Shown one piece after another: positions 11,442-12,705 of a stretch of DNA of 64,000 nucleotides. Made by a program: the position numbers and the translations under genes. Each line of letters starts with the position of its first letter. Position 1 is the first letter of the stretch. This DNA comes from Ostrea edulis (taxonomy: Eukaryota), in NCBI RefSeq assembly GCF_947568905.1, contig NC_079173.1, positions 36,208,001 through 36,272,000 on the forward strand, read 5' to 3'. Below the pieces are notes generated by a model, which was given only the letters and a program-made list of their open reading frames with translations, was not told where the DNA came from and did not search any database.

Positions 11442-11499
<58 letters not shown>

Positions 11500-11534
11500 T
11501 GACGATCAGATGGAGTTCAATCACATAACATTTA

Positions 11535-11589
11535 TTTCTCTACAGGCTGTTTCGTGAGGGGATGGTTTCCCCTCACTCGTCGGGAGAAA
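11535..11589 (-). ncRNA. Mirror-image hammerhead in the left palindrome arm
   Basis: Exact reverse complement of 12508-12562. Confidence 0.78.
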
Positions 11590-11666
11590 AATGACATCTA
11601 ACGAAAAACATCCGCGTGGCTGAGAATATGTTACACAGAAACATACTGGATGGTTGCTAAGCATGA

Positions 11667-12035
11667 TTACACACAGGATTGAGTAAATAGAAATTTATGG
11701 GAATGACGGCAAGTGCTGACAAGTTCTGAACGCTTATTCAATGAAGATTTTTCGGGATGACATATTATAAAGAATTTCTCTAGAATACAGAGGTTGCACT
11801 TTTTTGAAATGTTTGAGTATGATGATGTTTTTCCTAAAATTTCCCACTTGATTTTGTAGTCAATATTTTTGTCTTTCAATGTCCATATGAATTTGCTGAG
11901 CTCGGTGGTATTCTTTTTCGTGGAATTACGGAATGAATGAGTGTGGTTGGCGTATCTTAATTTGAACTCGGTGTCTGCTAGTCCCACGTAGCTCTCTTCT
12001 TGTCCATTATCGGCTCTGACTCTAGCTAAATACAC
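11667..12035 (-). mobile_element. PLE GIY-YIG endonuclease domain (5'-truncated), left arm
   Basis: Translation identical to 12062-12430. Confidence 0.85.
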
Positions 12036-12061
12036 AATTCCGTGGGCGCGCCCACGGAATT

Positions 12062-12430
12062 GTGTATTTAGCTAGAGTCAGAGCCGATAATGGACAAGAA
12101 GAGAGCTACGTGGGACTAGCAGACACCGAGTTCAAATTAAGATACGCCAACCACACTCATTCATTCCGTAATTCCACGAAAAAGAATACCACCGAGCTCA
12201 GCAAATTCATATGGACATTGAAAGACAAAAATATTGACTACAAAATCAAGTGGGAAATTTTAGGAAAAACATCATCATACTCAAACATTTCAAAAAAGTG
12301 CAACCTCTGTATTCTAGAGAAATTCTTTATAATATGTCATCCCGAAAAATCTTCATTGAATAAGCGTTCAGAACTTGTCAGCACTTGCCGTCATTCCCAT
12401 AAATTTCTATTTACTCAATCCTGTGTGTAA
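12062..12430 (+). mobile_element. PLE GIY-YIG endonuclease domain (5'-truncated), right arm
   Basis: GIVYLARV...SYVGL...FK.RYANH..SF...TELSK.IW.LK...KCNLC.LEK...LNKRSE..S.CRH; mirror copy at 11667-12035 (-). Confidence 0.85.
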
Positions 12431-12507
12431 TCATGCTTAGCAACCATCCAGTATGTTTCTGTGTAACATATTCTCAGCCACGCGGATGTTTTTCGTTAGA
12501 TGTCATT

Positions 12508-12562
12508 TTTCTCCCGACGAGTGAGGGGAAACCATCCCCTCACGAAACAGCCTGTAGAGAAA
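12508..12562 (+). ncRNA. Type I hammerhead ribozyme with variant core in the PLE 3' region
   Basis: tttctc-CCGACGA-gtgagggga(aacca)tcccctcac-GAAA-cagcctg-TA-gagaaa: 6-bp stem I, 9-bp stem II, near-palindromic stem III ACAG-C-CTGT, GUA triplet (cut after 12556); U4 replaced by C. Confidence 0.78.
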
Positions 12563-12657
12563 TAAATGTTATGTGATTGAACTCCATCTGATCGTCAATT
12601 TATGTAGCTCCGTGAGGCCACGTCGAGCACTCTAGAAGATTATATCGGAGATTTATC

Positions 12658-12705
<48 letters not shown>

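What the first reader, a model, noticed from the sequence alone, without database searches (positions are those of the whole stretch)
11494..12661. Spacer-less 1110-bp perfect palindrome of a Penelope endonuclease 3' end, with a hammerhead in each arm, inserted in (TA)n
Seen: two 555-bp arms with no mismatch found by eye diverge from a zero-loop centre (12048/12049), 12 nt upstream of the GIVY motif. Each arm has a GIY-YIG ORF and a hammerhead. The right arm continues 57 nt further, and (TA)n tracts border both sides. Established: PLEs often show inverted 5' structures, and long perfect palindromes are unstable. Inference: a very recent insertion in which truncated cDNA folded back and was copied. 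Transcription from either strand would give a 555-bp dsRNA with a ribozyme near its 3' end, a ready trigger for endo-siRNA or piRNA silencing of the family. It could also extrude as a cruciform.
Basis: partly seen in the sequence, partly recalled or inferred. Interest (0 to 1): 0.85.

Follow-up and report, generated by a model that had tools for sequence, protein, structure and literature searches.

The report
Head-to-head Penelope retrotransposon pair, perfect palindrome
The 1.1-kb perfect palindrome is real, but it is the usual way this young oyster Penelope-like retrotransposon inserts (two truncated copies head-to-head in a TA microsatellite), here with both copies cut at the same base, so it is a tidy example of a known pattern, not a new kind of element.

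Summary
Observation confirmed. Window 11494-12048 and 12049-12603 are exact reverse complements (555 nt, no mismatch, no spacer). The right arm alone runs on for 57 nt, and (TA)n lies on both sides.

The arms are the 3' ends of a ~2.4-kb Penelope-like element (RT plus C-terminal GIY-YIG). The family is very young: about 400 candidate copies at 99.5-100% identity, in an oyster-like 895-Mb genome.

The architecture is not special to this locus:
- About 24 of 29 independent loci I examined are head-to-head pairs.
- Where both outer ends were visible, one arm always ended at the same internal site without the 57-nt tail, and the other always carried the tail.
- Nearly all ends abut (TA)n.
- Relatives in other animals, for example a bryozoan, show the same layout.

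All of this is published PLE anatomy (Craig 2021; Arkhipova 2013; Frangieh 2024). Exact symmetry is the rarer sub-case. I found one more such junction and four near-symmetric ones, always at short self-complementary microhomology (CGCG here).

The "hammerhead" is the family's homologue of the PLE mini-hammerhead, but it has C instead of the conserved U at core position 4, and Rfam gives no hit.

I could not test the assembly with long reads or small RNAs. The scan's note s1-302173 describes a similar palindrome elsewhere in this genome.

The parts
11444..11493 (.). left (TA)n flank, part of the target microsatellite
   Evidence: TRF finds (AT)26.5 at 100% over 11444-11496. The last 3 nt overlap the arm end.
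11494..12048 (-). inverted arm: 5'-truncated PLE copy, ending at the family's 'no-tail' 3' end (ref 2419)
12047..12050 (.). CGCG at the centre. It is self-complementary, belongs to both arms, and acts as the junction microhomology.
   Evidence: Both arm alignments to the reference element overlap by 4 nt. Reads from other copies continue normally from 12047 and 12050.
12049..12603 (+). forward arm: the same 555 nt of the PLE (ref 1865-2419)
12604..12660 (+). 57-nt 'tail', present only on the forward arm
   Evidence: All 28 tail ends and all 18 no-tail ends in the sampled loci follow this rule.
12661..12702 (.). right (TA)n flank
   Evidence: TRF finds (AT)21.
12050..12430 (+). C-terminal ORF fragment (AHGIVY... 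to the stop), the GIY-YIG endonuclease part. The mirror copy is at 11667-12047 on the - strand.
12508..12562 (+). hammerhead-like motif: helix I TTTCTC/GAGAAA, core CCGACGA (C4 at 12515), 9-bp helix II, GAAA, predicted cut after 12556
11535..11589 (-). mirror copy of the hammerhead-like motif (C4 at 11582)

Best explanation
This is one retrotransposition event of a very young oyster Penelope-like element (PLE) into a (TA)n microsatellite. It produced the family's standard head-to-head pair of 5'-truncated copies. That identification I hold at about 0.9; the confidence given below is for the mechanism that follows. Most likely mechanism, inferred: the element's GIY-YIG endonuclease cut both strands of the TA tract, and each 3'-OH primed reverse transcription of the same template. 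One priming started at the outer start site, giving the arm with the 57-nt tail that ends at 12660. The other started at the inner start site, giving the arm without the tail that ends at 11494, equivalent to 12603. Both cDNAs stopped at the same base of the template, just upstream of the GIVY codons. Their identical 3' ends finish in CGCG, which is self-complementary. They paired over these 4 nt and each was extended on the other, which yields a spacer-less perfect palindrome. Shown here: the anatomy, the family-wide rule, the shared template and the microhomology. Inferred: the order of events and the dual priming.
For: - The palindrome and its flanks are as described.
- The family is young and heavily 5'-truncated. 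There are 388-425 candidate copies of the 3' end at about 99.5-100% identity, against 18 candidates for the 5' end.
- About 24 of 29 independent loci are head-to-head pairs, mostly with unequal truncation points.
- One arm always ends at ref 2419 without the tail (18 of 18, all followed by TA). The other always carries the tail (28 ends, 26 followed by TA).
- If each arm chose its end independently, 18 of 18 mixed pairs would have a probability of at most 0.5^18.
- Arms within a pair differ at 0.18% of sites, against 0.40% between loci, and many pairs show 0 differences over 500-1234 nt.
- Both arms here share a variant that is rare in the family (11652/12445).
- Junction overlaps are mostly 0-4 nt. 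A full-length forward arm (ref 72) joined to a 1234-nt inverted arm (L033) argues for independent ends.
- The same layout occurs in relatives from other species. In L050 (Watersipora) the arms are 1384 nt and 100% identical, with a TA tract at the inverted arm's outer end and another about 60 nt beyond the forward arm's matched part; a tail there was not checked.
- Literature: an inverted 5'-truncated copy, a tail at one end and (TA)n bias are described in PMC8557442. Purified PLE protein cleaves and extends both strands from two internal RT start sites, and the interval between them is the tail (PMC11167929).
Against: - No molecule-level evidence was obtained. Short-read data could not isolate the unique centre junction or bridge the TA flanks.
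- In vitro, the two start sites showed no strand preference, so the strict one-tail rule needs an extra assumption, for example one RNA serving both primers.
- Two polymerases stopping at exactly the same base needs a cause, such as a shared template end, a pause site or a collision, and I could not show one.
- Near-symmetric junctions are commoner than independent stops predict: 4 of 24 within 30 nt, against 1.05 expected, P about 0.016. Two more were found by pattern search. That excess is what fold-back would predict.
Confidence: 0.55

Rival explanations
1. Fold-back (self-priming or copy-back). A single target-primed cDNA, truncated near the GIVY codons, turned back on itself and was copied. 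The endonuclease then trimmed the second arm at the tail boundary before it was joined to the other side of the TA tract.
For: - Near-symmetric pairs are over-represented.
- Their centres look like hairpins, with a 2-nt self-complementary overlap and short one-sided loops. L035 has AT with about 8 nt, and L036 has GC with about 15 nt and a private G>A shared by both arms. C5:71397071 has a 12-nt centre, and L027 has about 25 nt.
- Arms within pairs are nearly identical.
- Arkhipova et al. 2013 argued for self-priming from palindromes at inverted junctions (PMC3846280).
Against: - A copy of the first cDNA should include the tail, yet 18 of 18 inverted arms stop at the same internal site.
- Most pairs would need loops of hundreds to about 2000 nt.
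- A zero-nucleotide loop here, and a 1-nt loop at C1:25811245, cannot form within one strand.
- Recurrent inverted-arm stops at ref 2101-2103 in four loci look like polymerase stops.
Confidence: 0.3
2. Assembly artefact: a missed-adapter or chimeric long read produced a false inverted duplication.
For: Perfect, spacer-less palindromes are the classic signature of such reads. I could not inspect long reads, and short-read contigs did not visibly bridge the centre or the flanks. The centre was not found in metagenome contigs.
Against: - The arms end exactly at the element's two natural 3' ends and at (TA)n, and the unique flanks are not part of the palindrome. An adapter artefact would mirror the flank as well.
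- The same architecture, mostly asymmetric, recurs at more than 20 other loci and in assemblies of other species.
- It matches published PLE anatomy.
Confidence: 0.04
3. Secondary origin. Either a solo truncated copy was later duplicated in inverted orientation by replication or repair, or all pairs are born as perfect palindromes and the asymmetric ones arise later by central deletions.
For: Long palindromes are prone to centre breakage and to one-sided deletions with microhomology (general knowledge). The junctions show 0-4 nt overlaps.
Against: - The tail/no-tail rule at the outer ends is set at insertion, not by later events at the centre.
- A junction lying exactly at the canonical full-length 5' end (L033) and recurrent stop positions do not fit random deletions.
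- Arm identity is no lower in asymmetric pairs than in symmetric ones.
Confidence: 0.05

Closest known systems
Canonical PLE insertion architecture (pseudo-LTRs, adjacent inverted 5'-truncated copy, one-sided 30-40-bp tail, microsatellite targets): Evgen'ev & Arkhipova 2005, Arkhipova 2006, Craig et al. 2021 (PMC8557442)
   Same: Inverted 5'-truncated copy abutting the forward copy, tail on one end only, (TA)n target with no discernible target-site duplication, heavy 5' truncation, and tandem units elsewhere in the genome (2416-nt period at C10:4.20 Mb).
   Different: The tail is 57 nt rather than 30-40 nt. Here both arms are truncated at the same base, so the pair is a spacer-less perfect palindrome with no full-length ORF. 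The clade (Neptune, Nematis or Penelope/Poseidon) was not determined.
Poseidon PAc from Anolis, in vitro TPRT (Frangieh et al. 2024, PMC11167929)
   Same: Cleavage and extension of both target strands at AT-rich DNA. Two internal RT start sites whose interval equals the tail. The hammerhead is not needed for insertion.
   Different: In vitro the start sites showed no strand bias. In this oyster family, every pair whose two outer ends I could see has exactly one tail. No biochemistry exists for this family.
Adineta vaga Penelope elements with palindromes at inverted junctions and the self-priming hypothesis (Arkhipova et al. 2013, PMC3846280)
   Same: Head-to-head inverted repeats with short palindromes at the junction. 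Self-priming was proposed as the cause.
   Different: Those palindromes are 18-38 bp, at pLTR ends of low-copy elements. Here the whole 1110-bp insert is the palindrome, in a family of several hundred near-identical copies.
Minimal type-I hammerheads of metazoan PLEs (Cervera & de la Pena 2014, PMC4209133)
   Same: Position in the 3'/pLTR region, open helix I, long helix II, a rudimentary helix III and a GUA cut site. Helices I and II covary among seven related elements.
   Different: The core reads CCGACGA. C replaces the conserved U4 throughout this family, while all six relatives I compared keep U4.
L1 twin priming (Ostertag & Kazazian 2001; cited from my own knowledge)
   Same: The second target strand also primes reverse transcription, which creates inverted segments joined by microhomology.
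   Different: Twin priming starts internally on the RNA and gives an inversion without duplication. Here both primers start near the 3' end, so the same sequence is present twice.

Membership tests
Penelope-like element (EN+ PLE) | Single ORF with a reverse transcriptase followed by a C-terminal GIY-YIG endonuclease | tested here: met
   A 664-codon open frame in copy L031 carries RT-type motifs (FDIVDFYPSI, MGS, YRDDG) and GIVY...YVG, with a Cys-rich linker before them. Homologue P0001 passes the Pfam GIY-YIG cut-off on the stretch aligned to the arm fragment. Homologue P0019 matches RVT_1 at 25.9 bits, below its 29.6 cut-off. Pfam is blank on this copy itself.
Penelope-like element (EN+ PLE) | Partial tandems (pLTRs) and an adjacent inverted 5'-truncated copy | tested here: met
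   Head-to-head pairs occur at about 24 of 29 loci. There is a tandem with a 2416-nt period at C10:4.204-4.209 Mb.
Penelope-like element (EN+ PLE) | Short 'tail' extension at only one end of the insertion | tested here: met
   The 57-nt tail sits on the forward arm only. All 18 no-tail ends and all 28 tail ends follow the rule.
Penelope-like element (EN+ PLE) | AT-rich or microsatellite target preference | tested here: met
   44 of 46 element ends abut (TA)n. TRF shows (TA)n on both flanks here.
Penelope-like element (EN+ PLE) | Phylogenetic placement of the RT within the PLE/TERT-related clade | not tested
   No reference PLE RT set was available. The 2929 homologues are unnamed invertebrate proteins of about 700 aa. 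A PDB profile search found nothing.
Hammerhead ribozyme (type I, PLE mini-hammerhead) | Helices I and II flanking the core, supported by covariation | tested here: met
   Helix I has 6 bp and helix II has 9 bp here. Both helices change sequence but keep pairing in five of the six relatives; in L051 and L052 the automatic parse closed no helix II, and pairing there rests on my reading by eye past a U-U mismatch. The minimum-free-energy fold gives the three-way layout, z = -2.6.
Hammerhead ribozyme (type I, PLE mini-hammerhead) | Conserved core C3 U4 G5 A6 N7 G8 A9 ... G12 A13 A14 A15.1 ... U16.1 H17 | tested here: not met
   All core positions fit except position 4, which is C (12515 and 11582). 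No variant of 10% or more appears there in family reads. All six relatives have U4.
Hammerhead ribozyme (type I, PLE mini-hammerhead) | Match to a curated covariance model | tested here: not met
   No Rfam hammerhead hit at E<=1 in 10500-13700, and none at gathering score in the whole window. From my own knowledge, the Rfam models expect a helix III that mini-hammerheads lack, so this is a weak negative.
Hammerhead ribozyme (type I, PLE mini-hammerhead) | Self-cleavage at the predicted site | not testable with these tools
   This needs an in vitro cleavage assay, as monomer and as dimer, with and without the element's protein.

The most novel reading that the evidence does not exclude
This family gives a natural read-out of the still unsolved PLE integration step. 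The strict rule of one tailed arm and one untailed arm, the near-identity of the paired arms and the excess of near-symmetric junctions could together mean the following. A dimeric RT-EN complex copies a single RNA twice, from two fixed start sites, on the two strands of a broken TA tract. Perfect palindromes such as this one would then mark run-off or collision at a common point. In addition, a family that fixed C at hammerhead core position 4 yet made hundreds of near-identical copies would show that ribozyme cleavage is dispensable for PLE transposition in vivo.
Probability: 0.3. Interest if true: 0.5.

Novelty: new member of a known kind. Interest (0 to 1): 0.25.

Why it matters
For this locus alone, it matters little. 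It is a textbook PLE insertion in its most symmetric form, and it should be annotated as two truncated PLE fragments, not as a new structure. It has some practical value. Such inserts are hard to assemble and can be mistaken for artefacts or for hairpin-RNA genes; Rfam's miRNA and scaRNA models do score the centre spuriously. At the family level, several hundred nearly identical, mostly paired copies with precisely readable junctions are good material for working out how PLEs integrate. They could also test whether the hammerhead is needed, and whether host small-RNA defence responds to built-in inverted repeats.

Tried and rejected
- Rfam, by E-value on 10500-13700 and at gathering score on the whole window: no hammerhead. 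The only hits are sub-threshold miRNA and scaRNA models (MIR5185, SCARNA17, mir-1277) that merely score the palindrome or the TA tracts. I rejected them as artefacts of hairpin shape.
- Pfam on the arm ORF, on the 473-aa ORF and on the 664-aa ORF: nothing significant. The domain assignment had to come through homologues.
- PDB profile search: no match.
- Read laying on 11200-13000 with one raw-read run and three contig runs. The arms are swamped by other copies, TA tracts are skipped, and flank depth in the raw run is only about 1-2. It therefore gives no verdict on the centre junction, on bridging of the flanks or on an empty allele.
- Exact scan of metagenome contigs for the 34-nt centre: no match, which is uninformative.
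The extra pairs at C6:80341381, C2:13779055, C3:42030874 and C1:11986198 are known only by coordinates.
- My first palindrome scan listed L007 as symmetric. Closer reading shows an offset of about 10-12 nt.
- The exact-extension junction table overstates "filler" where a copy differs from the reference by a SNP, so I used it only for overlaps.

Full report
**1. The observation**

The sequence at 11200-13000 and a base-by-base comparison about 12048/12049 show 555 perfectly complementary positions on each side. There is no spacer, and the first mismatch is at position 556. The repeat finder reports the same pair as 558 nt at a rounded 100%.

The right arm runs on through 12604-12660, which is 57 nt of unique sequence. 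Pure (AT)n lies at 11444-11496 and 12661-12702, with a third tract at 12791-12848. A 555-nt perfect inverted repeat cannot arise by chance.

Each arm holds the last 126 codons of an ORF (AHGIVYLARV... to the stop) and a hammerhead-like motif. The centre is 7 nt, not 12 nt, upstream of the GIVY codons.

**2. What the arms are**

Searching the window's own genome (895 Mb, 52 contigs; the window is on C10) with the right arm gave 425 first-look candidates. Forty were scored, nearly all at 99.7-100% identity over all 613 nt. A second search gave 388 candidates. Only 18 candidates carry the 5' part, so the family is young and heavily 5'-truncated.

A tandem on C10 with a 2416-nt period, and the longest copy (L033), set the unit at about 2406 nt. 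In my reference L033:5200-7760 the element spans 72-2477. The no-tail end is at 2419 and this palindrome's centre is at 1865.

Copy L031 has a 664-codon open frame with RT-type motifs, a Cys-rich linker and GIVY...YVG. Pfam is blank on this family itself. However, 2929 homologues of about 700 aa at about 50-55% identity exist in invertebrate data. One of them (P0001, Solemya velum) passes the GIY-YIG cut-off on exactly the stretch that aligns with the arm fragment at 53% identity. Another (P0019) matches RVT_1 at 25.9 bits, just below its 29.6-bit cut-off.

Runs that hold the stretch are labelled organism A and "oyster metagenome".

**3. The architecture is the family's rule**

I mapped about 29 independent loci onto the reference. 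About 24 are head-to-head pairs: an inverted 5'-truncated arm abuts a forward arm.

In every pair whose outer ends I could see, the inverted arm ends at ref 2419 without the tail (18 of 18, all followed by TA). The forward arm carries the 57-nt tail (28 ends, 26 followed by TA; the other two lead into a tandem unit or other sequence).

Truncation points are usually unequal, with offsets from 0 to about 2000 nt. Junction overlaps are mostly 0-4 nt. One full-length forward copy (L033) is joined at its canonical 5' end to a 1234-nt inverted arm. Inverted arms stop at ref 2101-2103 in four independent loci.

Arms within a pair differ at 0.18% of sites, and part of that is alignment edge effect, against 0.40% between loci. 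Many pairs show no difference over 500-1234 nt.

In this locus both arms share a variant that over 85% of family reads lack (11652/12445). The paired arms therefore come from one template. Perfect arm identity is ordinary in this family.

**4. Relatives elsewhere**

Contigs encoding homologues at about 51-55% identity show the same plan.
- In Watersipora subatra (L050), the two arms are 1384 nt and 100% identical. A TA tract abuts the inverted arm's outer end, and another lies about 60 nt beyond the forward arm's matched part. I did not check whether that stretch is a tail.
- L051 and L052 also have inverted arms of about 400-500 nt.
- L053 and L054 have an oppositely oriented gene fragment directly upstream.

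**5. The hammerhead**

At 12508-12562 the RNA would form:
- helix I (UUUCUC/GAGAAA),
- a core reading CCGACGA,
- a 9-bp helix II,
- GAAA,
- a rudimentary helix III,
- GUA, with the predicted cut after 12556.

The minimum-free-energy fold gives this layout.

Six related elements have the motif in the matching place, with CUGAUGA or CUGAAGA cores. Helices I and II differ in sequence among them. Pairing is kept in five of the six by an automatic parse. For L051 and L052, helix II is my reading by eye past a U-U mismatch.

So the motif is the true homologue of the PLE mini-hammerhead (PMC4209133), but this family has C at the conserved U4. Family reads show no variant of 10% or more at that base. 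Rfam gives no hammerhead hit. From my own knowledge, changes at U4 lower cleavage, so activity is doubtful and untested. Frangieh et al. found the hammerhead unnecessary for insertion in vitro, which fits a very successful family with a deviant core.

**6. Comparison with what is known**

Craig et al. [quoted passage not shown]

Arkhipova et al. 2013 noted palindromes at inverted junctions and proposed self-priming.

Frangieh et al. 2024 showed that a purified PLE protein cleaves and extends both strands, and starts reverse transcription at two internal sites whose interval is the tail.

The finding is therefore a member of a known kind.

**7. Why this pair is exactly symmetric**

Exact or near symmetry is a minority class.
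- This locus has offset 0, with its centre in CGCG.
- C1:25811245 has offset 0, with its centre in the element's own GTTCnGAAC.
- L035 has an offset of about 10-12 nt with an AT overlap, and L036 has an offset of 17 nt with a GC overlap and a private G>A in both arms.
- C5:71397071 has a 12-nt centre and 499-nt arms. This is probably the locus of the scan's note s1-302173.
- L027 has an offset of about 27 nt.

In a permutation of the observed truncation points, 4 of 24 pairs lie within 30 nt against 1.05 expected (P about 0.016). This sample includes the trigger locus.

The overlaps are self-complementary, as they must be when two strands of the same polarity, or one strand with itself, pair at their 3' ends.

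Two routes give identical sequences.

(a) Two cDNAs are primed on the two target strands from the two start sites. They stop at the same or nearly the same base, pair through the terminal microhomology, and each is extended on the other.

(b) One cDNA folds back and copies itself.

I favour (a), for three reasons:
- It explains the fixed tail-less end of every inverted arm.
- It explains the many pairs with very unequal arms.
- It explains centres with loops of 0 or 1 nt, which cannot fold within one strand.

Route (b) is favoured by the excess of small offsets of 8-27 nt, which look like hairpin loops. The strict rule of one tail per pair is not explained by independent choice of start site. 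It suggests that one RNA serves both primers. This is an inference.

**8. Artefact?**

I could not inspect long reads. Short-read data were uninformative. However, the arms end at the element's two natural ends and at TA tracts, and the unique flanks are not mirrored. The same plan, mostly asymmetric, recurs at more than 20 loci and in other species' assemblies. The centre junction occurs only once in the assembly. I put the artefact reading at about 4%.

**9. dsRNA, piRNA and cruciform**

A read-through transcript of either strand would indeed fold into a 555-bp hairpin. I have no evidence of such transcription or of small RNAs. Most copies of this family already carry inverted arms and the family is still nearly identical in sequence. 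So the built-in hairpin has evidently not stopped its spread so far.

**10. Verdict**

The palindrome is real. It is an ordinary, if unusually tidy, product of PLE integration. Interest in the locus itself is low, and interest in the family as material for studying the mechanism is moderate.

Noticed in passing
G000:C1:25811245-25811303 (not fetched): A second exactly symmetric head-to-head junction of the same family. The arms are about 233 nt and the centre lies in the element's own near-palindrome GTTCnGAAC.
   Followed up: partly
G000:C5:71397071-71397126 (not fetched): An inverted pair with 499-nt arms and a 12-nt non-palindromic centre (9 templated nt plus TTT). It is probably the locus that the scan's note s1-302173 called an apparently perfect palindrome.
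   Followed up: partly
L016, L017, L018 (G000:C1 at 79.86, 80.16 and 80.63 Mb): Three loci carry the same pair with identical truncation points (forward from ref 833, inverted from ref 1710). This looks like a segmental duplication of one insertion rather than three separate events.
   Followed up: no
L023, L024, L038, L039 (G000:C10:4.204-4.210 Mb): A head-to-tail tandem of full units with a 2416-nt period, joined through a few TA. A more complex inverted piece lies next to it.
   Followed up: partly
L033:5886-5888 and L033:5320-5440: The longest copy, which I used as the reference, has a private in-frame TAA where 20 other aligned arms read GAA. In this copy the conserved N-terminal peptide lies in a different frame from the main ORF. 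I did not assess other copies for this and did not attempt any repair.
   Followed up: partly
family-wide, ref 2101-2103 (window equivalent about 12285-12287): The inverted arms of four independent loci (L014, L028, L030, L046) all stop within 3 nt of each other. Three more stop at ref 1710-1723. These are recurrent stop or joining sites of unknown cause.
   Followed up: no
window 12703-12925: Two similar units of about 90-130 bp, each ending in or next to a (TA)n tract (12661-12702 and 12791-12848). This is a local duplication of the microsatellite-bearing flank.
   Followed up: no
window 14985-15305 (-): A 107-aa ORF matches the Pfam Death domain (23.7 bits, cut-off 22.6). It is probably an exon of a host gene about 2.3 kb from the palindrome. 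I did not determine whether the insertion lies in its intron.
   Followed up: no
window 9694-10056 (+): A 120-aa ORF (…YDKRDDISFSIVNF…AYGVYISQLIRYARA…) that, from memory, looks like a fragment of another retroelement polymerase. Pfam gave no hit.
   Followed up: partly
window 12001-12096 and 11967-12130: Rfam's miRNA (MIR5185, E=2.7e-12) and SCARNA17 models score the palindrome centre below their gathering thresholds on both strands. This is a false lead caused by the hairpin shape.
   Followed up: yes
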